A DNA stretch of 64,000 nt from Vitrella brassicaformis CCMP3155 (Eukaryota > Protista > Chromerida): NCBI GenBank assembly GCA_001179505.1, contig CDMY01000061.1, positions 1-64,000 on the forward strand, written 5' to 3'. Shown here piece after piece: positions 1,433-17,331 of this stretch. The first letter of the stretch is position 1. Every line of letters starts with the position of its first letter. The notes beneath the pieces were generated by a model. It did no database searches, was not told where the DNA came from, and saw only the letters and a program-made list of their open reading frames with translations. Made by a program: the position numbers and the translations under genes.

Positions 1433-1732
1433 NNNNNNNNNNNNNNNNNNNNNNNNNNNNNNNNNNNNNNNNNNNNNNNNNNNNNNNNNNNNNNNNNNNN
1501 NNNNNNNNNNNNNNNNNNNNNNNNNNNNNNNNNNNNNNNNNNNNNNNNNNNNNNNNNNNNNNNNNNNNNNNNNNNNNNNNNNNNNNNNNNNNNNNNNNNN
1601 NNNNNNNNNNNNNNNNNNNNNNNNNNNNNNNNNNNNNNNNNNNNNNNNNNNNNNNNNNNNNNNNNNNNNNNNNNNNNNNNNNNNNNNNNNNNNNNNNNNN
1701 NNNNNNNNNNNNNNNNNNNNNNNNNNNNNNNN
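1433..1732. other. assembly gap (300 N)
   Basis: Run of N flanked by purine/G-rich simple repeats. Confidence 0.99.
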
Positions 1733-3052: not shown

Positions 3053-6000
3053 TCACACAGACGGGGAAGGCGCGTCGTCAAAAGCGGCGTCCCTGTCTCT
3101 CCTTCCCTGACCGCCCGGCTGCAGCCCCCCTGATGACCTACGGCCACCGGCTATCCGGCCCCTCTCCCTGTCTATCGCCTCCCTATTAGGATCGCGCACT
3201 TCTCGGTCCTCCGGCGCCCCTCGCGGCCGCTGGCTGTACTGGTGTTGCTGCTGCTGCTGGCGCTGCTGTGAGTAGGAGCCGCGTATCATCTCTGTTGGCG
3301 GTGCGCTGTCGGTGTAGTCGCTGGCATAGTCGGATGAGCCATGTCTCGGTTGCCGGGTCTGTTGGGGGTAGTTCATGCGGCTCACGGACGTCAAGCCGCC
3401 CATCGACGTGACGTCCGACCCACCCGGCGACACGTCTGCCACACTTGGCGGCAAGTATTGGGACGTGGCTGTTTGGTGGAGGCTCACACCTTCGATCAGC
3501 GGCCGGGCCTGCGTCTGGGGGCCGTATGTTGGCTGTGTGAAGGACGAACTTGACATCGTCGGCGACCGCGAAGCTCCCGACATAGAAGGGTCAGATGATG
3601 GTGGGATGGCTCCCTCCCTGGCCAGCCTCTTACGGGCTTCCTTCTCCTCCCTCTGTCGCTGTTTCTCGTCAAAGTAGGGCCTTACGAGCTTCTGGTAGAG
3701 TATGGGCGAGGTCATGAGGAAGACCAGAAACCCTGTGCCGACGAGACATATGATAACGATCGCCCACACAGGGAACTCCTGCGCTTTGGGCGGCTTGGCG
3801 TCGGGCACGCTCCGGACCGCACATGTGATGTCCGGCTTTTCCTGTGGACAGGAGGTCCGTCCAGGAGCACACTCCGGCACCCAGGCCCCGTCGGTGCACA
3901 CAAATGTCTGCGACGAGATCGATCCCTTGGTGGGAGCATATCCCGACGCACAACGTACTGTCCGCGAATTCGTGTCGCTGCCCAAGACAGAGTAGTTGCC
4001 GTACTGGGCGATGATGGGCTCCAGGGCGAGACAGCCCCCGCCAAATTGACACGTCAACGTCGGCGCGGGCCACACTCCGTTATCGCACACCAGTGTCTCC
4101 GGGTCAGGCCCACCAGTTCGTTCAAAGCCTTCGATGCAAGAGACAGTTCGACTGTTCCCGTGCCGCTCGCCAAAGCCGCTAGTCTGGTAACTGGTGGAGG
4201 TGTAGGGGTCGGAACCGCACGGCAGCCTGCAGAAGAGGAGGTACTCTCCCCTCGGCGGAAGCCACTTGCCGTTGCTGCAGGTGACGACTTGTGGGGATGT
4301 GCCTTCGATGGCGTCATAGCCCGGCTGGCAGGCCACTGTGCGGGTCGATCCATCTGCGGTGCCTTGGCCGCTGATGGCGTAGGGGAGACTCGCCTAACAA
4401 CATCATGCAGGCGTAGGGAACACACAGACCGCATGTGTTTGTGTGTGCTCACTCTCACCGATTCAGGGATATCGAGGGGGACCATTACGGGGCAGTCCTC
4501 TTTGATGAGCGAATTCTCGAGCCCCTCCATGCCGAGGGTGCCCACATAAGGCATTGGAGGGGCCTGCAAACTGGACGCTCGCGGACTCTCGCGCTGAACA
4601 GCGCTTGTGTAGATAGTCGCTGAGTCGACCGTTATTGGGGCCCGGCCGTCGATAAGAGCGGCTCTGAACGGTGTCTTGTCTGCGAGGGCCGCTTCAATGG
4701 CCTTCCTGAGTTCGCTACTTTCATGAAGGGCCTTCAGTTGCTGCATGGAGAATGCAGTTTTCAATGTGAGTGACTGAGAATGCCTTTCTGCCTCTCCTGC
4801 TTACAGTTTTGGCCCTCCTGGCTTGTCCGCCCACATCGACAGCCACTTCCAGGCGAACGCTTCCAGGCCACATGCGGACCTCCGTCACATCCGATGGCAG
4901 CACACCCAACAGGTCAGCCAATGTCGCCTTCAGAATTGCTTGCAGCTCCCTCGCCCCACTGTCACGCTCTGTCAATGTCGAGTTCCAGCCGGGCGTGAGG
5001 CGGTCGAAGTTGATGTTGTCGAGCTCAAATCCAGCGCGAACCACCTGTCTTGGCAGACCTTGTGCGCATGCGCGGTCGAGGGAGATGCCACATTTCTGTT
5101 CGACCCACGCAAGAGACCGGTCGAGCCTCCACTCTGGCATGGTCAGCCGGGGGTGGACGGCATCGATGCGAAGGGCCTCGCGTAGCACCTCCCAGAGAGG
5201 GGAGAGACAGCAGCCCTTGTCATCCAGCTCAACTGCAGACACAGAGACATGACACACACTGGCCGGCATGTGCTGGGCGTGTGTGTTCAAACCGTCGATC
5301 GCTTTTTTGCAGTCGAAGGTTGCTTCCGTGCGGCTGCAATTGAAGGAGGGGTGGAATGGAGAGCACAGAGCCGTGTGCGCCCCGACGCTTGGCCCCTCCG
5401 TGAAGAGTTCCTCAATGGAAGGGTTGCTCCCCAGAGACTGAGGGAAACAGCCATCACGAAGAACGAGACACGCAAACGACGTGTTCGTGTCGCAGCATGC
5501 ATATTGTTGTTGGCACTTACCGCTGCGAGCGTCTCGAGCTTGCTGATGTGTGTTAGCCGGTCATCGACATTTGGGAACATGCTGCGGAAGAAGCAGTCAT
5601 CTCCGTCCCAGCCACACGCCTCATTGAAGCAAGACACGTCGCACTCGCCGTCTGCCCGAACATCAAACGGACGGACAGACAGACAGACAGATAGACAGAC
5701 AAGCAGACAAAAAGGTTGAAAGATGAAGTGCCATTGACCTAAAGACACGTCGCCCGTCACGACTCACCTCCGATGTATCCAACGGGACATTCGCAGTTTG
5801 GGTAGCTGCTGCTCGCCACCGGGCTGTATTCGATGCTGTTGCGCCTCCTGCGGTATTGGAATATGTACTCGCCGCAGTATCGCCGGTTGCGGTTCTGCTG
5901 GCAGAAGAAACGGCCGTAGGATATCAACAGCGCACCCATGGCGGTGTCGTAGGGGTCCTGGCGCTCCTCGCCGCGGCCAGACACAATCTGAGGATCGACA

Positions 6001-9000
6001 GCAGATCACGTGTATGTCTGCCTGACACACCACGATCTGTTTGGGTACCTGTCCGAGCGTTCTTGCTACGATTGTGATGCACTGGCCCTTGCACGGATCC
6101 ACCGGTACGCCGCCTTCACGAGGCGCGGCAACGACGGGGTTGTACGTAGCGATCTGCTGCACCGCCGACGCACAATAAGCAGATCCAGTCTCAGGGTCCT
6201 CTCTGCAGCGAAAGAGATACGTATTAGGACAGACACGCATCGAGCGAATTGCGTAATTTGTACTTACTTGAGGCACATAATGTCGACTGTCTGGGCGGTG
6301 AAGCCACCGAGGTAGTCGTCCACCTTAGCCATCAGCCGCCGTCGAGTCTCCGCTCCCACAGCGGCGAAGTCCAGCACGGGGTGCACCAGCCGATCGACCA
6401 ACCCATCCAGAGACCTGCCGCCACCACTGATGCTCCGTGCTGCAGTCATGTCTCTCGCCACCCGTCTCGCCACGCCTCCCTGCGTATGCAGATCACCCCG
6501 GAAGTCGGCGCCCTCCAGCGGTGCGTCGATGGACAGCATTCGTGTGTCTGGCCGGCCGCCCGGCTGTCGCATGGCCAGCCGGTGGAGGCTTTCGTAGTAG
6601 TCGAGGTTGGACCTGAAGCAAGAATTTGGCTGGCAGTCGACGTCCAGCTGCTGCGACTGCTTGAGGGCAAATCGGTCGATGGCGAAGTTGCGCTTGTCGC
6701 TGCCTGCCTGGGCGAAGCAGTACTGGCCGCTGGGCCTAGCGCACCAGTCATCTATGAGGGACCTGATGTTAACGAGACAAGACGCATCAGCGCGGGTGCC
6801 CACCACACAAGCCTCCTTTGCTCCTGACCGTGCAATCGTGACGTCCTCGCATCCAGGCCCACTTGACCCGGCGAAGGACTCCACCACGGCCTCCATCTGC
6901 CTCACACAGGGAGTGCCCCCCGAGCCCTCACAGAAAGTCCTTATATCCTCCTGGGTCTCGCCGTAAAGCCACGTTCCACACTCGCCCAGCAACACATTGA
7001 AGAACTCAGGCAAGAAGGCGCAGCAGCCCTCCGCATCCACACGGTTCGTGCACTCGGCAGGCGGCTTGACCACTGCGGGAGCTGCAAACGACGGGCCGCC
7101 TTCGGGTGGGGCGAGGGGGTCCCTCTCGCAGCGGATGACAGAGCGGACGGGTGGTTCAAACTGGCCGTCAAGGCAGGTGACCTGAGCAGGCTGGTCGAAG
7201 GGAGGGCCATAGGCCCGCCGTGCGTTGGAGAGGCAGTCAACCATGCGCACGTCGCCGTGACTGTAGCCATTCACGCTGCCGAATGTGACGTTAATCTAAC
7301 AGAGCAGGACAGAGGCAGGAGGTCAGAGAGTGGGGTGGGTCTTCAGGCGCGTGCTCTCACTTGGTAAAGGTCTCGGTCAATGAGCTTGAAGTCTCCCTCA
7401 CTGCAGATCCGACACGGCCGGCACTCAGGACCACCGCAGTCGATGCCCTAAACCAAGAGACACGCACATTAAGACAGAAGTGTCGTGTATCTTGTGCGAT
7501 GAGGAACGCTTCTCTCTACTTGTTCCACTCCGTTTTGGATTCCATCGTTGCATGAGATACATGCATTTGGGCAGCTGCCGCCACAGTCCACACCGACCTC
7601 ATCCCCATCAGCATACCCGTCGGTGCACGTCGGAACTGCGCACACACACACACGCACACACACACACACACGAGAGAGAGAGAGAGAGAGAGAGATACGT
7701 GCACGTGCCCGCCACTGCCATCTTTCATACGTATGCACGTGAGTCGCAGCCCCGATGAGTCATAAATCCCATTTCGACACTCGATTGGGGCCGTCTGGCA
7801 CAGCTCGACCGCGCTCTTGGCGTTCTCAGTCACCTGGTAGGCGCCCTCTCTGCACTTGACGTCGATTTTCCGCCCGTGTGGCACAGTCGTTGTGTCGGAT
7901 ATGACCTCATATGCCGCAGAGAGAATCGGCAGGCCGATGCAGCTTTGGCAGGCAGGGCAGGAGCCTCCGCAGTCGATGTCCTGCTCGTCGCCATTCTTGA
8001 TGCCGTCTGTGCATGAGGGGCATGAGGAAGCCGGACATGGGCCGCCGCAGTCGACGCTGGTCTCGCCGCCTGCCACGAGACGAAAAGACACAGAGACACA
8101 TGATGAGGCATGCTCTAGTTGACCGCGACTGTAACCGTTTCTGATGCCGTCAGTGCATGTCGGTTCGCACATTACGCGACACACGATGCCACAATCCACG
8201 CCATCCTCACCGCCGTTCTGCACCCCATCAGAGCTGGAGAAGACGACATGAGTGTGCAAGCCGCGATGCATCTATCTATCCGTTAGGTGTGTCTCCCCTT
8301 ACCAGGTCGGGCAGGACGCCTCACACGACCCGCCACAGTCAACACCCTCCTCGTCGCCATTCTGAAGCCCGTCGGTGCAGCTCGGGACTGACCGACAAGC
8401 AAATACATAGACAGAGTGAAGATCCACGATCGCATTCATCCATTCGTCTATCTGTGTAGCTCCTCGCCCGCCAGCATACAGGTGCATATGGTGGCGGGTT
8501 TGTCGAATCGTCCGTTTGTGCATGTGATTGTTGACTCGCCGGGGCCGCATATCTGCAGGGCTGTCGGCTTGCACTTGAGTGTCCGCTCTGCCATGTACCG
8601 GAAGTCGCTGCTGCCTGGCGGGGAGATGATGTAGGCACCCTTGTACTGCAGCAGCTGGTCTTCATTGCACCGAGCTGCATGCAGGAAAAAGAGAGAGCGA
8701 TGGATGGGTTTGCGTGTTGTGTCTTCGGGTCACTGCGTCCCGCTGCCCACCTCTGCAAGTGAGGTTTGCTTGGCCGTCCCATTCTCCGTCGTAGCACTGG
8801 ATCAGCTGCTTCACCTTGTCTGAACGTCGCGCACGTCACATGCAAACATGCACACATCCATCTTGTTCATTCACTGACTCACTCCACTCACCCATGGGGT
8901 CATATCCATCGGCACACCGCACCTCCCTGGTGCTCAGGTGGGTCGTACCGGAGCCCAGCACATCATACTGTAGCGGCGCCATAAACTCGCTGCAGCGCCC

Positions 9001-12000
9001 TGACAGCAACCACCACACCAGACACAACACAACATTCACGTGTACATGATGGATGGATGTGCTGCCGCTGGCTCACTGAAGCAACCGAGAGGCACGGTCT
9101 CGCCCTGCAGCCACACGCCATCGTTGCACACGACAGCTGACGGCTCCACCCCGGTGTATGCCGCTGCTCCCGGCGCGCACTGTATCGAGGCGATGGCGCC
9201 CTGGCCGAAGCTGGTTAGGTATGATCGGTAATCGTAAGACCGGCCGAACTGATCCGTTGGCACGTTGCAGGGCGCTGCAGGCACGGAAGAGTGAGTGAGG
9301 AAGGAAGAGTGAGTGAGGAAGAGTGATTGTCTCTGTCTGCCTGTCTGGCTGTCTGTGTGTCTGTGTGTCTGTCTGTCTGTCTGTCGATGTGTGTGGCAGT
9401 AGCACTCACACACGAAAGCAAGGGCTCACTCACCCCTGCAGATGAGTTGCTTGAGTGTCCACGCGCCCGACTCCCTGCATGTGACAATCTCCCCGTCGGT
9501 GCCAGCCTCCCTGGTGGCGTTGGGGAGGCAGCTGACGGTGATGCTGTCACCCGTCCACTTCTGAGAACCCCGGATATCATACCCATTGCCGCCAGGATTG
9601 TAGTCGCCGCATGACGCTGACAGGAGACAGACATACAGACAGACGATGGACCCATATGGTCGACCTTCCTCCCTCCTGCCGTGCTTGCCTACGTTCGCAA
9701 TTGAGCTGCTGTTGGAGCACCTGAGCCTGGGTCAGGCCGTCAGACGTGGTCCAGATGCCATCGGTGCAGATCGCCGTGGTGCTGTCGTAATTGCGAGAGG
9801 CGTAACCTCTGGCACAGTCGACTGTGTAGACAGTCCCGTGCTTGCGCCCGAGCCCCCGGGCAGAGATCTTGGAGCCCAGAGAGGGAAACTCACCGCACGG
9901 ACCTGGCATGAGTGACCATGACCAACATACAAGCAGACAGATGACAAAAAACAATGGGAATGCTCTTGTCTCACCCTTGCACTCGATATTGTACTCAGTC
10001 CACCTGAGCGGGCTTCCCCTGCATTGAGAGGCCTGCGGCTGAGCGCCGGCGGTTAAGACAGAGTCTTCCCTACACCTGAGAACCCGCTGGGTTCCCTCTG
10101 TAGTGCCGTCGCCTTCGATCGAGTAGGCGATGCCCAGGGAGGGGAAGGGGCCGCACGAGGGACCGCATCGGAGGTCAAAGCCGCCCCACTTCCCTGCAAC
10201 ACCAGACACACAGGAAAGAGGCAGGCCGAATCTGTTGTCCCTGTGTTGGTCCGCTTGTATGCGCAGCGTTCGTTACCTACCGTCGTTGCATTCGACTTCT
10301 TCAAAGTCAGCGCCGGCTGACACGCCAAAGCCCTCCGCGCACGTCACATTGACGACGGCTCCGTGCTCCACACCTGTGCCCTCGAGCGCAAATTGAGGGC
10401 CCAGCTGCTGAAACGGACCGCAGTCGGCTGGGATAGAGTAACAAGGACACGTGGCGGCCAGGGAGATGACACATGGATGGAAAGTCGATCGGTCAATCAC
10501 CCGTCTCTTCCACCTTTGCATTCGATGGTTTTGGGTGTAAAGTTTTCGTTGTCGCACACGACGATCTCCGTCTGGTTGGGGCCGTCCACACTGAAGTTGG
10601 GTGCACACGCGACCTCCCGCTCCGTCAGGTGCTTGACGGCCGGCCATTCGCCGTATTCCCTGCCTGATATGACGTACTGGGGACCGAGATTGCCGTACTC
10701 AAGACAGGGAACTGCGCAGACACGCACGCACATTTATGTGACTGAGGGATAGACAGCGAGAGGCGCGAAATGCTGGAGACGTGCGTACCTCCGTATGCCT
10801 GGAAGACGAGTGTCTCCTTCTGGACCCAGGGGTTGTAGGCAAGGTCGGTAATGGCGCCTAGACTGACATCGATATAGTAGACCTCGCCGTACGTGAAGGG
10901 CTCCCCTGGCTTCAACACGATCTTCGCCGTCTGGTCCGAGACGATCCACTTGCCGCGCATGCCCTCATCGGAATCCGGGACAATCGTCTGCTTCCCACCC
11001 CAGAGGTCTCCTGAGTCATGAACATATACATGCATTCACGCCGAGCTGTCCCTGTTTGTCTCTTCCTTCACTGACCGACCTGCGAATACAATTTCGGCAG
11101 GCTGGTCTGGGCGTGAGTGTCCGTAAGTAACTGGTTCATTGAACGTCAGGACCACCTCGGAGTCGATGGGGACGTCGTAAGACGCTATTTCAGGTGACAT
11201 GCCGATGAGGACCGGGCCGGTCCTGTCTGGCGCCTTGCTGCACAGCACGTGGACATCGGGCTGGTCCTCCCATTTGTCGACGAACTTGTACCACAGGCCC
11301 GACATCGGGAGGTCGGGGTTGGCTGCAGAGGCCATCAGCTCAGGGCTGGTGCCCGCTAATACCTGGTCGGGGTCCAAATCGTTGTCAATGATCCACGCCG
11401 CCGCAGTTTCTGCATGCACAACATATATGTATATAGGTATACACATCGATTTGTGGCAGTACATCCAGTCCCGCGGACGAGACACGGGCGGCCACACCCG
11501 TCGTGTACCCACCCACCTCCTCGTTCCGGTGTCCAGTAGAGGAAGAATTCGGCAATATCTCCGCCCTTCCAGACGGGGTGGCCCCTCTCGGGCTCGATGG
11601 GCCTGTACAGCCCATTAGGGTTCCCCCTAAGGTGGTAAAAGCCTGCCAAACGGGGAATGAGGTGTGTATCGGTTGTGTCTGTGCGTATGCAGTGCAACCG
11701 ACCGGTGATGTATATGTATGGACATCCACCGTCTTTGCGGATTGAGAAGTCGTAATCCACTTTGCCCTGATTCCAATTGCCTGCAGATCAATGCGTGACA
11801 ACCCACACACTCATCGTCTCGCCTCCTCTCTCCTTTGGTGGGCATTTACCTACCCTGCAAGTCGGCCACGATGCCGGCGTCAAAGCCCACTAAGTAGTCG
11901 CCCTCGGGCAAAGACGCGGCATTCGGCTCCGGGACGAACGTCAGTTCCAGGCCAGATACCGTCACGCTGGTGCTACCTAAGTGAATCACACATATTTCAG

Positions 12001-15000
12001 GCGCGCAGACACGCACACACCTATGAAGCAAGGATGTTGGTTGGCTGGATTGATGCTGTCTCTTGGCTTACTCATCCTGACTTCCCATTGTGCGCCTTCG
12101 ACTGCGGTGTTGATCAGGATGATCCTGGCATCCGCCTTGGCCTTCGTGACCGACTCGCTGAAGAAGAACTTGATCTCCTTGACGGGAGGCACCGCATTCG
12201 AGCCTTTGGCGGGCTTGTACTCCTCCACGAAGGGAGGTGAGCTGTCTGCCTGTCGGCCGCAGCAGAGACATACAGAATCAATTCGGGTGTGTACACGTGT
12301 ACGTGTGTTCAGGCACATACTTGGCATGTGCCTTCGATACAGAACTCGTTCTCCTCACACTCATTCGACATGATGCACTCAGCTGCACTCATGCACACAC
12401 AGACAAACAAAGAGACCGGGAGGGACGAATGGAAGATATCATAAGACGGGGACGAAGGATGGATGGTACAGTGCTTCCCTGCTTTGTCTGCTTACCGACT
12501 GAGAGAATGCCCAGGTCAGCATCGAAGTCCTCAGGCTGGTTGCAGGGGATCCCGTCGCCACCGTTGTCCTGACCAGCGCACCCACACAGCCGGTTGGTCG
12601 CTGCACGCCCGAATGGTTGGCAGAAGCACGACGCAGCACCACCCCAAAGAGACACACCCAACACACACGAGCATAGACTGAAACGAACGAGCCAATCAGA
12701 CGTGTTTGGTCACCCACGTACCTCCGGGGATCGCGTCGGTGCCGATGTTGATTTTGCAGTTTTCGTCAGTGTCGACGTCGAAGGCGCACGGCAGTGCCTC
12801 GTCGTCGATTGCGTCGGGGTCGAGAGCCACTTCGGCACCGCACTGCTGCTCTATGGCCAATGGCAGCACCTTGAACGCCTCTCCTATTGCCTGAGTGAAT
12901 CAATCAGTCACCCAACATACAAAACAACACAACACACGCATGTGCCATGTGGAGTGTCAGATGTCCACTCATCCATCCATGTACTGACTCACGCTAGATG
13001 CGAGTGCGGGCAGGCTGCAGGCGTCTTGTATGAGGCAGAAGTATGTCTCAGCGCCGGCCTCGACGGCCGTCTCGACGAAGCCCCCGCAGTAGGGGTTCAG
13101 GCCCGTCTGGGGGTCATACAGGCAGTAGGCCAGCACGTTGTCGGTGCAATGCTTGTTCGTGGTGCACTCTTGCGTAACCACGATACCTGATAGATAATCA
13201 ACTCACACACACACGCGGAAGGCGAATGAGTCCCAGCCAAATGGGTCATATTGATAGCCGCAGTCTGTATTCTGTTTGCCCGCGCCTGGCCTGTTTGTAC
13301 GAGTACCTACCGAGTGGCACAGTGAAGTCCTCAGGCCCGTCGCATTTCCTGTTGGAGTCCCCCCGTGCGATGCCGGGGCACCCGCACAGACGGACGCCAT
13401 CTTGGCCTCGGATGGTGGTGTTGCGCCGGAAAGGGACACCCAGGTTGACCTGGCAGCCGTCGGGCTCATCCGCATCGCACGTAAACGTATTCTTCGTGAA
13501 AATCGACTCTGCAAACAGAGCACGCACACACAGAGAAGGCCGCCCGGCGTGATTGACGTGCCGGTCATCCATCCATTCATTGGTTCGCTTCCCCTCTCCG
13601 CATCTTTGTGTGTGCGTATGTTTTGTGTATGCATGTGCGCACCGGAGGCTGTGAGTATCTCGCTGCCACAGTCCGATAGGAAGTCGACGGTCGCCAGCTT
13701 GAAAGTGTCGTCCACCCCGGCGCCCGGCAGGTCAGTCACGTCCATCTGACAAAAGTAGCCGTCGACGCACACCTTGGTGCGGTCGATCCCGGGCTCAAAC
13801 CCAGTGCACTGCCCGTCTCGGCACACGCCATAGCCCTCGAAGCACTCCCCGTCTACCGTGCACTCCCCACCGCCCGTTGTCTGCAACCGACGGGGCGACA
13901 CCACACCGGCGCTGCTCACGAGGGGATGCACGGCGTCGGCGTGCAGCGGGACTGTCGAGGCAGCTTTGACGGTCAGCCTGCCGAGATTGGTAGTGAAATC
14001 CTTGGCCTCGTCACAGTTGTTGACGCCGGCGCATCCACAAATTGTGGCGTCGATGGCGTCGCCGCCCATGACGCCCAGATTGACACCACAATTGATCTCA
14101 TCGGATGAAGCGGATGCGAGACATGGGAACGAGAGGACATGTGGGGAAGATGCTGACGGTTGGGGGCTGCTGGAGAGGGCAGCGGTGCTCTGATTGGCGC
14201 GGTTGAGCTCTGGGCCGATGAGGAATCCCTCCTGTCGCTTGGGGGGAGGGGAGGGCGTCGGCATTGCCATTTCCACAGAGTCTGTGGACGGAATGATGAG
14301 CAACCTGCGGAAGGCAAATGGATGGATGAGTGTTGCGCCATGTCCTCCTTTCCTTGGTGCGCACCGCACCCGTGCCCACCCTGGAGTGTCTGAGTCGCCG
14401 CATCGAGGCTGTGGGCCCCTCATCGGGTCAGGATGGATGATGAGCGTGACTTTATAGTCTGGGTTGATGCCCATGCCTTTGATGCCCCACAGAAAGCACA
14501 TCTCATACGCCTTGCACACGTGCTGCGGCGGCGCCGACAGGCTGGTGGGGGCGAAGCCGTGGGCCTTCAGAGATCCCACAGGGGCCAGAAAGTCTATGGC
14601 CTGATTGCAGGGGATCCCATCACCTGCACAGACACAGACACAGACACATGCATATGTAGCATTCACGTCGAGACATACCTCCTATGTCCACATTTGGGCA
14701 CCCGCACAGGTTGTAAGAGCCCAGCAGATCCGATCTCTCTATCGTCACGTCACAGCTCTTCTCATCCCTGGGCAGGCATGCCGCCGTGGCCACGGCCGCC
14801 CTCTCGCTCGCGCCGCAGGGCTGGTCGTCAGCGCGCACCTCGAGACGGTAGCTTTCCGCAGGGTTCTTGTCAAAGTGCCCCGGGATGCCACGCACAACGC
14901 CTCCGGGGCCTGTCCCACATTTGTACGTGGAATGACCCGACCCAGCAAAACCTGACACACACACACGGGCGCCGTACTCCGGTGTGCCCCTCGCCAGGCC

Positions 15001-15334
15001 ACACGGCCCACGCATCAATCAGATCTCACCCGTGCATTTGCCGTTGAGGCATGTGCGTCCCTTGCCGCATTGTCGGTCCGTTTGGCATGCACGCAGCTCA
15101 GCAAGTGCGCCCTCGTCCGGCAGCTTCCTGTGTTTGTGCGCAAGGACCTCCGAGTTGGACACATCCTGGACCGCCACTACCTGCATCAACTCACGCAAAC
15201 CATTGAGATCTCAATGCGTCTCAATGGCTCTTTTCCTTCATTCGCCAATTCGCCATTCGTACCGTGTCATCAGGGAATGCGCCCGCCGCGAGGAAGACAA
15301 GGACGGCCGCCACGAGTATGAATGCAGTCCTCAT
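3053..15334 (-). CDS. giant multi-exon type I transmembrane adhesin/receptor-like protein (signal peptide; Cys-rich CGC modules; 2 SbsA/Big-like Ig domains; ~12 Sushi/CCP-like domains; 6 CxDG..DCGG repeats; Cys-rich helical region; LNR; SEA-like; TM; cytoplasmic tail)
   Basis: Exon 1 15263-15334 encodes MRTAFILVAAVLVFLAAGAFPDDT (signal peptide) followed by a GT donor. More than 30 GT-AG-bounded exons of extracellular Cys-rich modules run without a gene-sized gap down to the last large exon containing Sushi repeats, the hydrophobic WAIVIICLVGTGFLVFLMTSPILY (~3690-3765), a basic stop-transfer stretch and a Ser/Gln/Tyr-rich tail ending at TGA 3053-3055. A single signal peptide and a single TM suggest one gene, but a split into two genes cannot be excluded. 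Confidence 0.8.
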
Positions 15335-15490
15335 CTTTCGTTGGTGTGCGCCAGGAACATGTGAAGGGTTGTCGTGTGATCCCTTTAGGTCGACGGTGGC
15401 GCGTCGGCGGGAAAGGGAGGGAGGGAAAGGTGAGACGGCCCCCACGTTCGCGAGCTCTAGCTCGCAACAGTGCAAAAAGGCCGTGCAAAC
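15335..15490. promoter_or_regulatory. putative bidirectional promoter/5'UTRs (adhesin <- -> kinesin)
   Basis: Only 156 bp separate divergent start codons at 15334 (-) and 15491 (+). Confidence 0.6.
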
Positions 15491-17331
15491 ATGTCGGACC
15501 GCAACGTCCGCGTCATCTGCCGCATCCGGCCGATGAACGAGAAGGAACTCAAGAGCGGAGGCCGCTGCTGTGTGTCAGTGGCACCGCCTCAGACCGTCTC
15601 AGTAGTCGCAGCCAATGAAAGGGCGTCAGCGGACGACCGCACATTCATATTCGACAGAGCGTTCAGCGAGAACTCGACGCAACAGGAGCTCTTCGAGGTG
15701 GCGGCCAAGCCAGTCGTCGACTCGGTGCTTGAGGGCTTCAATGGCACTGTGTTCGCGTATGGGCAGACATCATCAGGTACGATGGTCGTATGGGTGAGGC
15801 CACTGCACTGCGCTATTGTGTGTGTTGCCCTGCATGAATGCATTCAATGCATTGCAGGCAAGACACACACGATGGAAGGCGTGGCTGACGACACTGAGCT
15901 GCGGGGGATCATCCCGCGTATGGTGCAGCACGTCTTCGACGTAGTCGGTGCTGCTGACAAACACATCCAGTACACACTCAAGGTACATCAAACGACATCA
16001 TGACCAAACGATGAGCGCACACACAGACATCCTGAACCAGAAGTGGCCCCCCCTCCCTCTCTCTCTAGGTGTCGATCTTCGAAATCTATATGGAGAAAGT
16101 GCGCGACCTGCTCACCGCCGCCACCAGCGGCATACCCGACATCCGCATTTCCGAAGAAGGCAAGGGCAAAGGCATTGTCCTCAAGGGGCTGTCGGAGCAT
16201 GCCGTGGCCACGGGGGAAGAGGTGTGGGCGCTCATGGTGCGCGGGAGAGAGAACCGCTCTGTCGCAGTCACCAACATGAACGCGCATTCGTCGCGCAGTC
16301 ATATGCTCTTCTGCCTCACTGTCCACAAGAGGGACATCAGAGAGTTCAAATCGTCGGTAAGCACAGCACAGCACCCAAGACGGGAAGGGCAGCACGGCGG
16401 GGGCAGCAACCGAACCGTCCTGTATGCATATGTGCGTTTGTTCGTTTGTGTGGGTTGGGTGTGTGTCAGGTTGGCAAGCTGTATTTGGTCGATCTGGCCG
16501 GCAGCGAGAGGGTCCAGAAGAGCGGCGCAGAGGGAACCACCCTCGACGAGGCAAAGAAGATCAACCTCTCCCTTCTCACACTTGGTACGCCCTGTATGCG
16601 CCACCACCATCACCACCTCTGCCTCATTCTCTGCCTTTGGTGCATTAGCCAACCAGGCAACGTGATCAACGCCCTGACGGACGCCTCTTCCCGGCACGTG
16701 CCCTACCGCGACAGCAAGCTCACTCGAGTGCTGCAGGACTCATTGGGCGGCAACGCCAAGACGACCCTCATCATCACCGCCAGCCCCTCCACCTACAACG
16801 AAGCTGAGACCCTCAGCACACTGCGGTTTGGCCAGCGGGCCAGGGCCATCAAGAACGACGCACGCGTCAATCAGGAGTACACAGTGGAGGAACTCAAGGC
16901 CCTCCTGGTGAGTGAGAGAGAGAGAGAGAAAGCGAGCATCCGCTTTATACGCCTGCAAGCCCATGAGCATAATGCACCCCCATGAATGCGTGTGTGTGTG
17001 TGTGCAGGCCAAGGCAGAGAAGACGATAGCGAGGCAGGCCCGCGAGATTGAGGAGCTGGAGCGGCTGGTCAAGCGTCTGGGCGGCACCAAGCGGCTGTCG
17101 CAGGTGCGCGACGCCGTCGCCATGGCCACAGCCGACAGCGACACGAGCGAAGACGGTGCCACCAAGGCCACACGCCACGCCGCCGTTGCTGCTGGTGGTG
17201 GGAAGGGGACGGGTATGCGGTGGTACCAGCGATTGTGGCTGTGTCCGCCCTTCGCGCCCCTGAGCACCAAGAGGGACGAGCTGCGGGTGGTGCCTGTCAC
17301 CAGCGACGCCAGCTCATACACGGCCGAGTAG
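15491..17331 (+). CDS. kinesin-1 (kinesin heavy chain)-type motor with very short stalk/tail, 6 exons
   Basis: [18 protein letters not shown]-loop FAYGQTSSG|KT (the GQTSSGKT form typical of kinesin-1), [11 protein letters not shown], switch I NAHSSRSH, switch [33 protein letters not shown], neck [19 protein letters not shown], stop TAG at 17329-17331. Confidence 0.95.

What the first reader, a model, noticed from the sequence alone, without database searches (positions are those of the whole stretch)
4500..5850. Notch-like LNR + SEA module with an intact PG-SV autoproteolysis-type motif in a protist receptor
Seen: CECPVGYIG..GECDVSCFNEACGWDGDDC (5770-5800 joined to ~5590-5660) is a Lin-12/Notch repeat. 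Shortly downstream lies a SEA-like alpha/beta segment (VVRAGFELDNINFDRL...ELQAILKATLADLLGVLPSDVTEVRMWPGSVRLEVAV) with G-S-V at 4856-4864. Known: MUC1-type SEA domains self-cleave at G|SVVV (FRPG|SVVV), and the Notch negative regulatory region pairs LNR repeats with a SEA-like heterodimerisation domain as a force-gated proteolytic switch. Inference: this membrane-proximal unit could be an autocleaved, mechanosensitive shedding switch assembled independently in an alveolate.
Basis: partly seen in the sequence, partly recalled or inferred. Interest (0 to 1): 0.75.

Follow-up and report, generated by a model that had tools for sequence, protein, structure and literature searches.

The report
LNR plus SEA-like self-cleavage candidate
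A giant surface protein of the alga Vitrella, a free-living cousin of Toxoplasma and Cryptosporidium, has a true Notch-type repeat followed by a domain predicted to fold like the self-cutting SEA domain of mucins; the Gly-Ser cut-site residues are kept in every orthologue examined, so it may be a built-in breakpoint, but cutting is untested.

Summary
The window is from Vitrella brassicaformis. The region lies in the last exons of a 3033-aa type I membrane protein (CEL92240.1) on the minus strand, 15334..3053.

- **LNR.** A six-cysteine LNR split by an intron passes Pfam's threshold.
- **SEA-like domain.** About 130 residues downstream, AlphaFold2 (pLDDT 83-86) gives a beta-alpha-beta-beta-alpha-beta domain. 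G2474-S2475-V2476 (window 4864-4856) sits in the beta2-beta3 hairpin.
- **Fold matches.** The best ones are SEA and SEA-like ectodomains (EpCAM/Trop2, IA-2, MUC16, TMPRSS6, dystroglycan). Z is only 6-8, mixed with other ferredoxin-like folds. Pfam SEA does not match.
- **Conserved cassette.** LNR, cysteine-stapled helices, SEA-like domain, three sushi repeats, TM and tail recur across chromerids and Apicomplexa.
- **Gly-Ser conservation.** Gly-Ser is invariant in 23 of 23 sequences of this protein's type (Vitrella, Chromera, Toxoplasma and kin, eight Cryptosporidium species, Cardiosporidium). A paralogous clade (13 sequences) lacks the Ser and has a hairpin two residues longer.

So SEA-type autoproteolysis is plausible (about 0.45) but unproven. 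Three points of the interpretation fail or stay open: three sushi repeats separate the domain from the membrane, a Notch-NRR-like clamp is not supported, and the module is family-wide, not Vitrella-specific. The scan had noted this gene only on this same window, not on other DNA.

The parts
5768..5795 (-). LNR, first half (P0001 C2250..G2258 plus the first base of D2259); the exon ends at 5768
   Evidence: Exon model, identical to deposited protein P0001. A loose end of a spliced contig at 5768 continues into the next exon.
5593..5651 (-). LNR, second half (D2259..C2278: GECDVSCFNEACGWDGDDC)
   Evidence: Pfam PF00066, 30.6 bits, E 4.7e-7. Six cysteines at P0001 2250, 2252, 2262, 2266, 2271 and 2278. 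The family profile hits GNPTAB and Notch LNRs.
5066..5592 (-). Cysteine-stapled helical linker (P0001 2279-2406). It is encoded by 5592-5521, 5437-5293 and 5232-5066, with introns 5520-5438 and 5292-5233. It includes a disordered loop, a 31-residue helix carrying the invariant G-C-C, and the E-Q-x-C / D-R-x-C motifs.
   Evidence: AF2 model m005bebcba80c has helices 106-136 and 152-159. Invariant columns are C119, C120, C159, D164 and C167. A contig loose end supports the junction 5293|5232.
4805..5065 (-). SEA-like domain, N-terminal three quarters (P0001 2407-2493): beta1, alpha1, beta2, hairpin, beta3
   Evidence: AF2 full model and domain model, pLDDT 83 and 86. Fold matches to EpCAM, IA-2, MUC16 SEA and TMPRSS6 SEA at Z 6-8. 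A spliced-run contig covers 4818-5098.
4859..4864 (-). Candidate scissile pair G2474-S2475 in the beta2-beta3 hairpin (W-P-G-S-V)
   Evidence: DSSP on both models puts it in the turn between beta2 and beta3. G-S is invariant in 23 of 23 GS-type sequences. The paralogue clade has no Ser and a longer loop.
4567..4740 (-). SEA-like domain, C-terminal part (P0001 2494-2551): alpha2 (three helical segments) and beta4, after intron 4804-4741
   Evidence: It is Cys-free together with the rest of the core.
3869..4494 (-). Three sushi-type repeats (P0001 C2576..C2762), with intron 4458-4394 inside the first
   Evidence: Pfam Sushi E 2.7e-7 on the raw ORF. BLASTP to the protein's own sushi array 1060-1580 gives E 7e-16. 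The intron is seen as a joint in run X7.
3695..3775 (-). Single transmembrane helix (P0001 about 2794-2820)
   Evidence: Hydropathy scan: mean Kyte-Doolittle score 2.69 over 2796-2814.
3053..3694 (-). Cytoplasmic tail of about 213 aa, and the stop codon
   Evidence: ORF 3053..4336; C-terminus of P0001.

Best explanation
The region encodes the conserved C-terminal ectodomain cassette of a giant modular type I surface protein of Vitrella brassicaformis. The order is one calcium-type LNR, a helical subdomain stapled by conserved cysteines, a Cys-free SEA-like ferredoxin-fold domain, three sushi repeats, a TM helix and a tail. The family is shared by chromerids and Apicomplexa; it includes the Toxoplasma/Besnoitia 'sushi domain (scr repeat)' protein and the Cryptosporidium 'gigantic extracellular protein'. 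Shown or predicted here: the gene model, the LNR, the fold, the hairpin position of Gly-Ser and its conservation. Inferred: in this protein's type, the tight W-P-G-S-V hairpin self-cleaves between G2474 and S2475. The mechanism would be the strain-driven N-to-O acyl shift known from MUC1-type SEA domains. Cleavage would leave the roughly 2470-residue adhesive part held to the membrane stub (beta3, alpha2, beta4, sushi x3, TM) only by the shared beta-sheet. Pulling force could then separate the two, acting as a mechanical breakpoint or shedding device. The paralogue clade, with a longer Ser-less hairpin, would be the uncleaved version.
For: - Gene model: all splice sites are canonical, four introns are seen as joints in spliced contigs, and the model is identical to P0001.
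- LNR: passes the Pfam threshold.
- Fold: AF2 gives pLDDT 83 (pTM 0.81) for the module and 86 for the domain. The order is beta1, alpha1, beta2, [P-G-S-V], beta3, alpha2, beta4.
- Fold matches: known SEA/SEA-like ectodomains fill about half of the top rows. EpCAM Z 8.0; IA-2 7.5 (rmsd 2.6-3.3 over about 85 of 88 residues); Trop2 7.4; MUC16 SEA5 7.1; TMPRSS6 SEA 6.7; dystroglycan residues 597-710 Z 5.9. Foldseek gives phogrin a probability of 1.00.
- Constraint: Gly-Ser is invariant in 23 of 23 GS-type sequences across Vitrella, Chromera, Cardiosporidium, five sarcocystids and eight Cryptosporidium species, while mean column identity is 22%. Only about 20 columns are at least 90% conserved in that group, and W2472, G2474 and S2475 are the only ones specific to it.
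- Paralogue clade: 13 sequences, one branch with support 97/93. It has no Ser and a hairpin two residues longer. This parallels the published finding that glycine insertions next to the site relax strain and block SEA and SEAL cleavage (PMC10556640).
- No bridging disulfide: the SEA-like core is the longest Cys-free stretch (169 aa) in an ectodomain with 159 cysteines, and it is Cys-free in all members, so no disulfide could bridge a cut.
Against: - No sequence-level link to SEA: Pfam PF01390 is absent even at E 10 in all 25 members, and a profile search of PDB sequences finds nothing beyond the LNR.
- Fold scores are middling: Z is at most 8 and no Foldseek E-value reaches 0.001. Unrelated ferredoxin-like folds (IS200-type transposases, Thg1, TRADD-N, helicase-primase) score the same.
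- A Gly followed by a small polar residue in a tight beta-turn can be conserved for geometry alone.
- The Ser-versus-no-Ser split is one event on the tree, so the link with loop length is a single observation.
- The Cys-free core is shared by the Ser-less clade, so it is not specific to cleavage.
- No proteomic or biochemical data were available.
- The domain is not juxtamembrane, unlike most cleaving SEA domains.
Confidence: 0.45

Rival explanations
1. The same cassette and the same SEA-like fold, but with no self-cleavage. The domain is a rigid spacer or interaction module like IA-2, EpCAM or MUC16 SEA domains. W-P-G-S is then conserved because a two-residue beta-turn needs Gly and a small hydrogen-bonding residue.
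For: - The closest structural matches (IA-2, phogrin, EpCAM/Trop2, MUC16 SEA5) are, to my knowledge, non-autocleaving SEA-like domains.
- No SEA sequence signal.
- The paralogue clade works without the Ser.
- MUC16's DSVLV site, analogous to GSVVV, is reported as not the cleavage site (PMC4456727). This shows that a motif resemblance is not sufficient.
Against: - Ser is invariant in 23 of 23 sequences across very deep divergence, where Thr, Asn, Asp or Gly would serve a turn equally well.
- The loss of Ser coincides with loop lengthening.
Confidence: 0.35
2. A Notch-NRR-like protease-gated switch. The LNR and the helical subdomain pack on the SEA-like domain and hide a site for a separate sheddase (or regulate rhomboid cleavage in the TM helix). 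Force exposes the site, and Gly-Ser is incidental.
For: - The LNR directly precedes the module in about 20 homologues.
- The whole 341-residue model has pTM 0.81, which suggests one compact unit.
- SEA-like domains with a structured N-terminal neighbour behave as force-gated proteolytic switches (PMC6586460).
- Cryptosporidium relatives have been listed as candidate rhomboid substrates (PMC13095730).
Against: - Only one LNR is present, and a 125-residue helical subdomain lies between it and the domain.
- Foldseek to Notch1 NRR 7abv gives probability 0.21, TM 0.17-0.23 and rmsd 17.8.
- Notch NRR is absent from the top 50 rows of every VIA-align list.
- No Atlas model resembles the whole module.
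- C. felis lacks the LNR.
- Three sushi repeats separate the module from the membrane, so a membrane-anchored sheddase would have to reach far.
- Inter-domain contacts could not be read from the model with these tools.
Confidence: 0.12
3. The fold prediction is misleading: the segment is a family-specific domain unrelated to SEA in structure, and the G-S-V resemblance is chance.
For: - The alignment behind the models has only 25 sequences.
- No significant Foldseek E-value was obtained.
Against: - Two independent AF2 runs agree, with pLDDT above 90 over most of the core.
- The secondary-structure order is exactly beta-alpha-beta-beta-alpha-beta.
- Conservation of the hairpin motif is far above background.
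Confidence: 0.05

Closest known systems
MUC1-type autoproteolytic SEA domain (Pfam PF01390; cleavage at G|SVVV)
   Same: - Predicted beta-alpha-beta-beta-alpha-beta fold.
- Gly-Ser-Val at the beta2-beta3 hairpin, preceded by Pro, with alternating hydrophobic residues after it.
- Extracellular part of a type I membrane protein.
- No disulfide across the site.
   Different: - No detectable sequence homology (Pfam SEA absent at E 10).
- Alpha2 is longer (three helical segments).
- The domain is fused N-terminally to a cysteine-stapled helical subdomain and an LNR.
- It lies about 245 residues (three sushi repeats) from the membrane.
- Cleavage is not shown.
Notch negative regulatory region (three LNRs plus the SEA-like heterodimerisation domain)
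   Same: An LNR and a SEA-like fold in one ectodomain unit of a single-pass receptor; the LNR keeps the six cysteines and the D/N positions of the Pfam consensus.
   Different: - One LNR, closer by profile to GNPTAB-type LNRs (1.4e-11) than to Notch's (3e-5).
- A helical subdomain intervenes.
- No structural match to NRR as a whole.
- Not juxtamembrane.
- No EGF or ANK domains.
- Notch's domain lacks the autoproteolytic site (PMC6586460) and, to my knowledge, is cut by furin.
Dystroglycan proteolysis domain (Ig-like plus SEA-like; to my knowledge autocleaved at Gly-Ser into alpha and beta chains)
   Same: A SEA-like domain with a structured N-terminal neighbour in a large adhesion receptor that links the outside to the cell. 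It matches the model at Z 5.9, rmsd 3.3 over 106 residues (8yt8_O 597-710).
   Different: The neighbour there is a cadherin/Ig-like domain, not an LNR plus helices. Sequence identity is 14%, and the similarity is at fold level only.
Non-cleaving SEA-like ectodomains: IA-2/phogrin, EpCAM/Trop2 C-domain, PCDH15 MAD12, MUC16 SEA
   Same: These are the best structural matches (Z 6-8; IA-2 rmsd 2.6-3.3 over nearly its whole length).
   Different: To my knowledge they lack a Gly-Ser hairpin site. They are juxtamembrane.
Bacterial SEAL domains of RsgI anti-sigma factors (PMC10556640)
   Same: A precedent that a SEA-like fold with no sequence similarity to SEA self-cleaves in a short strained beta-hairpin, stays associated through the sheet, and is blocked by loop lengthening.
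   Different: Bacterial; cleaves at Asn-Pro, not Gly-Ser; different strand connectivity; directly juxtamembrane.
LNR-plus-sushi proteins outside Notch (PAPP-A; GNPTAB Notch repeats)
   Same: An LNR used as a calcium-binding module in non-Notch proteins. PAPP-A also combines CCP/sushi repeats with an LNR.
   Different: No metzincin or phosphotransferase domain here; the domain order and context differ.

Membership tests
LNR / Notch domain (Pfam PF00066) | Profile match above the curated threshold | tested here: met
   30.6 bits on the raw ORF and 27.6 bits on the spliced protein, against a cut-off of 21.2. The family profile hits PDB LNRs at E 1.4e-11.
LNR / Notch domain (Pfam PF00066) | Six cysteines and the conserved D/N positions of the C-x-W-D-G-x-D-C end | tested here: met
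   Cysteines at P0001 2250, 2252, 2262, 2266, 2271 and 2278. The alignment to GNPTAB LNRs shows DG-CD..C.N..C.WDG.DC kept.
SEA domain (Pfam PF01390) | Sequence-profile match | tested here: not met
   No SEA hit at E up to 10 on P0001, on the cut-out domain, or on any of the 25 family members. A profile search of PDB sequences gives nothing. The language-model look-alike list has a SEA cluster only at rank 7, score 0.82.
SEA / SEA-like fold | Ferredoxin-like beta-alpha-beta-beta-alpha-beta sandwich | tested here: met
   AF2 domain model, pLDDT 86: E14-24, H44-61, E68-74, E79-85, H87-123, E132-145. The same order appears in the 341-residue model. This is a prediction, not an experimental structure.
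SEA / SEA-like fold | Structural similarity to solved SEA domains standing above other ferredoxin-like folds | tested here: inconclusive
   EpCAM Z 8.0, IA-2 7.5, MUC16 SEA5 7.1 and TMPRSS6 SEA 6.7, but transposases, TRADD-N and helicase-primase score 7-7.6. No Foldseek E-value reaches 0.001.
Autoproteolytic SEA (MUC1 type) | Gly-Ser (G|S-V/I-V-V type) in the short beta2-beta3 hairpin | tested here: met
   W-P-G-S-V lies between beta2 and beta3 in both models. G-S is invariant in 23 of 23 orthologues.
Autoproteolytic SEA (MUC1 type) | Actual cleavage, with the fragments remaining associated | not testable with these tools
   This needs expression or proteomics. Only contigs, not peptides, were available.
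Autoproteolytic SEA (MUC1 type) | Position next to the membrane | tested here: not met
   245 residues (three sushi repeats) lie between the end of the domain and the TM helix. The gap is 236-404 aa in all 16 homologues with a TM helix.
Notch negative regulatory region | Three LNRs wrapped around the SEA-like HD domain | tested here: not met
   There is one LNR, then a 125-residue helical linker. Foldseek to 7abv gives probability 0.21. NRR is not in any VIA-align top 50. The LNR is missing in C. felis.
Notch receptor | EGF repeats outside and ANK repeats inside | tested here: not met
   Pfam on the whole of P0001 finds Big_5 and Notch and, in parts, Sushi, but no EGF or ANK. The tail is low-complexity.
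Sushi / CCP repeat | Four-Cys, one-Trp module matching PF00084 | tested here: met
   E 2.7e-7 on ORF 3053..4336. The cut-out 2560-2775 gave no Pfam row but aligns to the protein's own sushi array (Pfam 2.1e-14) at BLASTP E 7e-16.

The most novel reading that the evidence does not exclude
Chromerids and Apicomplexa share an ancient, undescribed autoproteolytic SEA-type module, built independently of animal SEA and Notch NRR and coupled to an LNR and a disulfide-stapled helical clamp. It would turn giant adhesins (the Toxoplasma TGME49_223480-like protein, the Cryptosporidium 'gigantic extracellular protein', two Vitrella paralogues) into two-chain, force-separable receptors. A sister clade (TSP1-rich proteins of Eimeria, Cyclospora and gregarines) would have lost the cut by lengthening the hairpin.
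Probability: 0.3. Interest if true: 0.78.

Novelty: new variant of a known kind. Interest (0 to 1): 0.6.

Why it matters
SEA and SEA-like domains are the core of several animal force-sensing and shedding systems (mucins, Notch, dystroglycan, protocadherin-15). Bacterial look-alikes were recently shown to self-cleave.

I found no paper, in a library search limited to open-access text, that describes such a module in alveolates.

This family includes very large, experimentally uncharacterised surface proteins of Toxoplasma and Cryptosporidium. The likely T. gondii counterpart, TGME49_223480, has a reported fitness score of -3.9 (PMC9218915).

A conserved built-in breakpoint would give a concrete, cheap test: an S-to-A mutant and a loop insertion. 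It would also give a mechanistic handle on how these adhesins are processed or released. Its presence in free-living Vitrella and Chromera would show that the device predates parasitism.

If the domain does not cleave, the result is still a clean annotation of a conserved cassette that the databases leave unnamed.

Tried and rejected
1. **Direct LNR-to-SEA exon join.** Joining the LNR exon straight to the SEA-like exon broke the reading frame. A loose end of a spliced contig revealed the missing 145-nt exon 5437..5293.
2. **Pfam SEA.** I searched the raw ORFs, the spliced protein, the cut-out domain and all 25 members. There is no SEA hit. Only a sub-threshold recurring match to PF23398 FAZ1_cons appears (6 of 25 members, best E 0.0045).
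3. **PDB sequence search.** The module profile matches only through the LNR, and the domain profile matches nothing meaningful.
4. **Foldseek against PDB.** No E-value reached 0.001 with either model.
5. **ESM Atlas.** By shape, the domain gives generic matches including EpCAM-like and TRADD-N, and the whole module has no look-alike (TM at most 0.37). By language-model features, only weak leads.
6. **Rhoptry-discharge idea.** I asked whether the family is MIC15/TSP1 (RDF1/2). I rejected this: the architecture in PMC9218915 Table 1 that fits is TGME49_223480 (TSP1 x16, sushi, Notch), not MIC15. The link to TGME49_223480 rests on annotation and architecture and was not tested by alignment to that accession.
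7. **Word search with P0001.** This found only three proteins. The exhaustive phmmer search was needed to see the family.
8. **Sequencing runs.** No run is on record as RNA. Two runs behave as spliced cDNA contigs, so they show exon joints but no level, ends or strand.
9. **Pfam Sushi on cut-out 2560-2775.** This gave nothing although the raw ORF scores. I resolved it by BLASTP to the internal sushi array.
10. **Not done.** HHpred-type comparison with a SEA profile was not possible, because no SEA sequence came from a tool.
Full report
**What is there.** The finding lies in a multi-exon gene on the minus strand. ORF listing and reading of the strand suggested exons with short introns. Contigs of two public runs that behave like cDNA carry four intron-less joints with CT..AC ends (4394-4458, 5988-6048, 6203-6267, 8675-8750). 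Their loose ends prove the junctions 5768|5651 and 5293|5232. With these I built the last seven exons: 6202-6049, 5987-5768, 5651-5521, 5437-5293, 5232-4805, 4740-4459 and 4393-3053. All have AG..GT borders and one open frame of 899 codons.

An exhaustive phmmer search with the exon that holds G-S-V returned a 3033-aa database protein, P0001, at 100% identity. Its last 899 residues equal my model. It is CEL92240.1 / A0A0G4E9W8 of Vitrella brassicaformis CCMP3155, named only 'Sushi domain-containing protein'. The gene runs from 15334 to 3053. This agrees with the scan's other note on this window.

**The observation.** Joined, they give six cysteines and the C-G-W-D-G-D-D-C end. Pfam PF00066 scores 30.6 bits on the raw ORF and 27.6 on the spliced protein, against a threshold of 21.2. 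G2474-S2475-V2476 is encoded at 4864-4856, exactly as stated.

**Architecture.**
- Signal peptide.
- Cysteine-rich N-terminal modules.
- Two Big_5 domains (E 2e-20).
- A sushi array (E 2e-14).
- About eight short C-x-D-G-x-x-N-G...D-C-G-G-x-C repeats.
- A cysteine-rich region.
- The LNR (2250-2278).
- A helical linker (2279-2406).
- The alpha/beta domain (2407-2551).
- Three sushi-type repeats (2576-2762). Pfam scores them E 2.7e-7 on the ORF, and BLASTP to the internal array gives 7e-16.
- One TM helix (about 2794-2820).
- A 213-aa tail.

These rest. So the domain is in the C-terminal cassette but not next to the membrane.

**Fold.** With a 25-sequence alignment (A1), AlphaFold2 models residues 2240-2580 at mean pLDDT 83.2 and pTM 0.81. 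The model contains:
- the LNR;
- short helices and a disordered loop (model residues 59-84);
- a 31-residue helix (106-136) and a short helix (152-159);
- then beta 172-186, alpha 203-220, beta 227-233, a turn, beta 236-243, helices 246-282 and beta 298-305.

The domain alone (A2, residues 2399-2551) gives pLDDT 85.9 with the same order. P-G-S-V (domain-model residues 75-78) is the loop between beta2 and beta3. This is the SEA / ferredoxin-like topology, and Gly-Ser is in the hairpin where MUC1-type SEA domains cut.

**Fold searches.** These agree in kind but not in strength.
- Foldseek finds no match with an E-value at or below 0.001. Its best extracellular rows are phogrin/IA-2 (probability 1.00, TM 0.56 by target, rmsd 3.5), EpCAM/Trop2, MUC16 SEA and TMPRSS6.
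- VIA-align on the domain gives EpCAM Z 8.0, SorCS2 7.6, IA-2 7.5, Trop2 7.4, MUC16 SEA5 7.1, TMPRSS6 SEA 6.7 and PCDH15 MAD12 6.0.
- The dystroglycan 597-710 domain gives Z 5.9 against the full model.
- IS200-type transposases, TRADD-N, a helicase-primase domain and the S6-like domain of alpha-dystroglycan score the same.
- The tool's own note says that Z below 8 may reflect only a common arrangement.

Pfam SEA is absent at E 10 in all 25 members, and PDB sequences give nothing beyond the LNR. I therefore call the domain SEA-like by predicted fold and context, not a demonstrated member of the SEA family.

**Family and conservation.** Only 24 proteins in 1.84 billion representatives match at E 0.001 or better. 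They come from Vitrella (a 59% paralogue), Chromera, gregarine transcriptomes (Selenidium and others), Cardiosporidium, Cryptosporidium, Besnoitia, Cyclospora and, by word search, Eimeria.

The LNR, the helical linker and the alpha/beta domain align as one unit in about 20 of them. The distance from the domain's end to the TM helix is 236-404 residues, mostly 245-260, in all 16 with a TM helix. The cassette is therefore old and fixed.

Invariant or near-invariant positions are the G-C-C on the long helix, D-R-S, E-Q-x-C, D-R-x-C-x-x-G-x-x-R, a D before beta2, and D-x-G after beta3.

At the hairpin the family splits in two.
- **GS type.** Twelve sequences have W-[PRST]-G-S-[VYL] (Chromera has E-G-S-L).
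- **Ser-less type.** Thirteen have a loop two residues longer (three in P0016). It ends in G followed by L, V, I or T, and none has Ser there.

On a maximum-likelihood tree the Ser-less set is one clade (support 97/93). All chromerid sequences are of the GS type, and Cardiosporidium and one gregarine transcriptome carry both types. These are therefore old paralogues, and the difference is one event.

Two further word searches added Hammondia, Toxoplasma, Neospora and Cystoisospora (M-R-L-W-R-G-S-[VI]-D-V) and seven more Cryptosporidium species (W-P-G-S-Y). This brings Gly-Ser to 23 of 23. Within the GS group only about 20 columns are at least 90% conserved, and W2472, G2474 and S2475 are the only ones not shared with the other clade.

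The core from C2406 to C2576 is the longest Cys-free stretch (169 aa) of an ectodomain that holds 159 cysteines. It is Cys-free in all full-length members, so no disulfide would hold the two halves together after a cut.

**Mechanism.** Published work states three things:
- Eukaryotic SEA autoproteolysis is driven mainly by strain in the short scissile hairpin.
- Glycine insertions beside the site block it.
- Bacterial SEA-like domains with no sequence similarity do the same (PMC10556640).

The MUC1 site is GSVVV (PMC4456727).

The Vitrella hairpin has the right residues, the right place and strong constraint, and its paralogues look like natural loop-relaxed versions. I therefore take self-cleavage at G2474|S2475 as the single most likely reading, at about 0.45. 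Its consequence would be a two-chain receptor in which force can pull off the 2470-residue adhesive part.

The main rival, at 0.35, is an uncleaved SEA-like spacer. The closest structural matches are, to my knowledge, non-cleaving domains, and a turn can conserve Gly-Ser for geometry.

A Notch-like clamp over a sheddase site gets 0.12.
- Against it: there is one LNR, a large helical insert and no structural match to the NRR (Foldseek probability 0.21). The LNR is absent in C. felis, and the module lies far from the membrane.
- For it: SEA-like domains with structured neighbours do act as switches (PMC6586460).

**Comparison and novelty.** The unit works like, or at least looks like, a MUC1- or dystroglycan-type SEA module. 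It fails the sequence test for SEA membership and the architecture test for a Notch NRR. The LNR is closer by profile to GNPTAB-type LNRs (1.4e-11) than to Notch's (3e-5). This fits independent assembly.

I found no paper describing a SEA-like or autoproteolytic module in this family. The Toxoplasma protein with the matching architecture (TGME49_223480: 16 TSP1, sushi, Notch domain, fitness score -3.9) is listed as uncharacterised (PMC9218915). That equivalence rests on annotation and architecture only.

I rate the finding as a new variant of a known kind, with interest 0.6. It is a sound, testable prediction on a conserved but unnamed cassette of parasite-relevant proteins, and the key claim is still unproven.

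**Limits.**
- The models rest on 25 sequences.
- I could not read coordinates or PAE, so LNR contacts and hairpin geometry are unknown.
- The exhaustive search used one sequence, so absence from Plasmodium, ciliates or dinoflagellates is not established.
- The runs used for splicing are contigs whose RNA nature is a guess. They support exon joints only.

Noticed in passing
window 7480-8570 (minus strand; P0001 about 1583-1800): There are about eight tandem 22-25-aa cysteine repeats of the form C-[TSN]-D-G-x-x-N-G-x-E-x-x-x-D-C-G-G-x-C, with one sushi-like module interleaved. Pfam gives no match at E 0.1.
   Followed up: partly
window about 12400-14730 (minus strand; P0001 about 150-690): Four or five copies of an N-terminal module share C-G-C-x-G ... 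G-D-G-I-P-C-N-Q-x-x-D-F ... L-G. Only faint Pfam hints appear (DUF7107, Dickkopf_N, EB) at the very N-terminus.
   Followed up: partly
P0001 2444-2496 (window about 4954-4805 and 4740-4732): A sub-threshold but recurring match to Pfam PF23398 (FAZ1 conserved domain) covers alpha1-beta2-beta3, including the G-S hairpin. It appears in 6 of 25 family members, best E 0.0045. It may mean a similar alpha-beta-beta unit exists in kinetoplastid FAZ1. I did not examine it further.
   Followed up: no
P0011 (Cryptosporidium felis) about 2300-2360: The LNR that precedes the module in other members is missing in the C. felis protein, while the flanking conserved segments are kept. This could be a real loss or a gene-model error.
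   Followed up: partly
window 1433-1732: A run of 300 N, i.e. an assembly gap. It causes the GC dip in the composition profile.
   Followed up: yes
window 5660-5709 and 7635-7721: Introns hold (GTCT)n and (CA)n/(GA)n microsatellites. Assemblies of the DNA runs break there. Introns of this gene are very short (60-116 nt).
   Followed up: partly
window 15470-17000 (plus strand): A kinesin-motor-like gene is transcribed divergently from the giant receptor gene. I recognised the motor motifs by eye in the ORF translations.
   Followed up: no
P0001 2560-2775: Pfam Sushi scores E 2.7e-7 on the raw 427-aa ORF but gives no row on the 216-aa cut-out of the same repeats. This is a reminder that hmmscan filters can drop weak multi-repeat hits.
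   Followed up: yes
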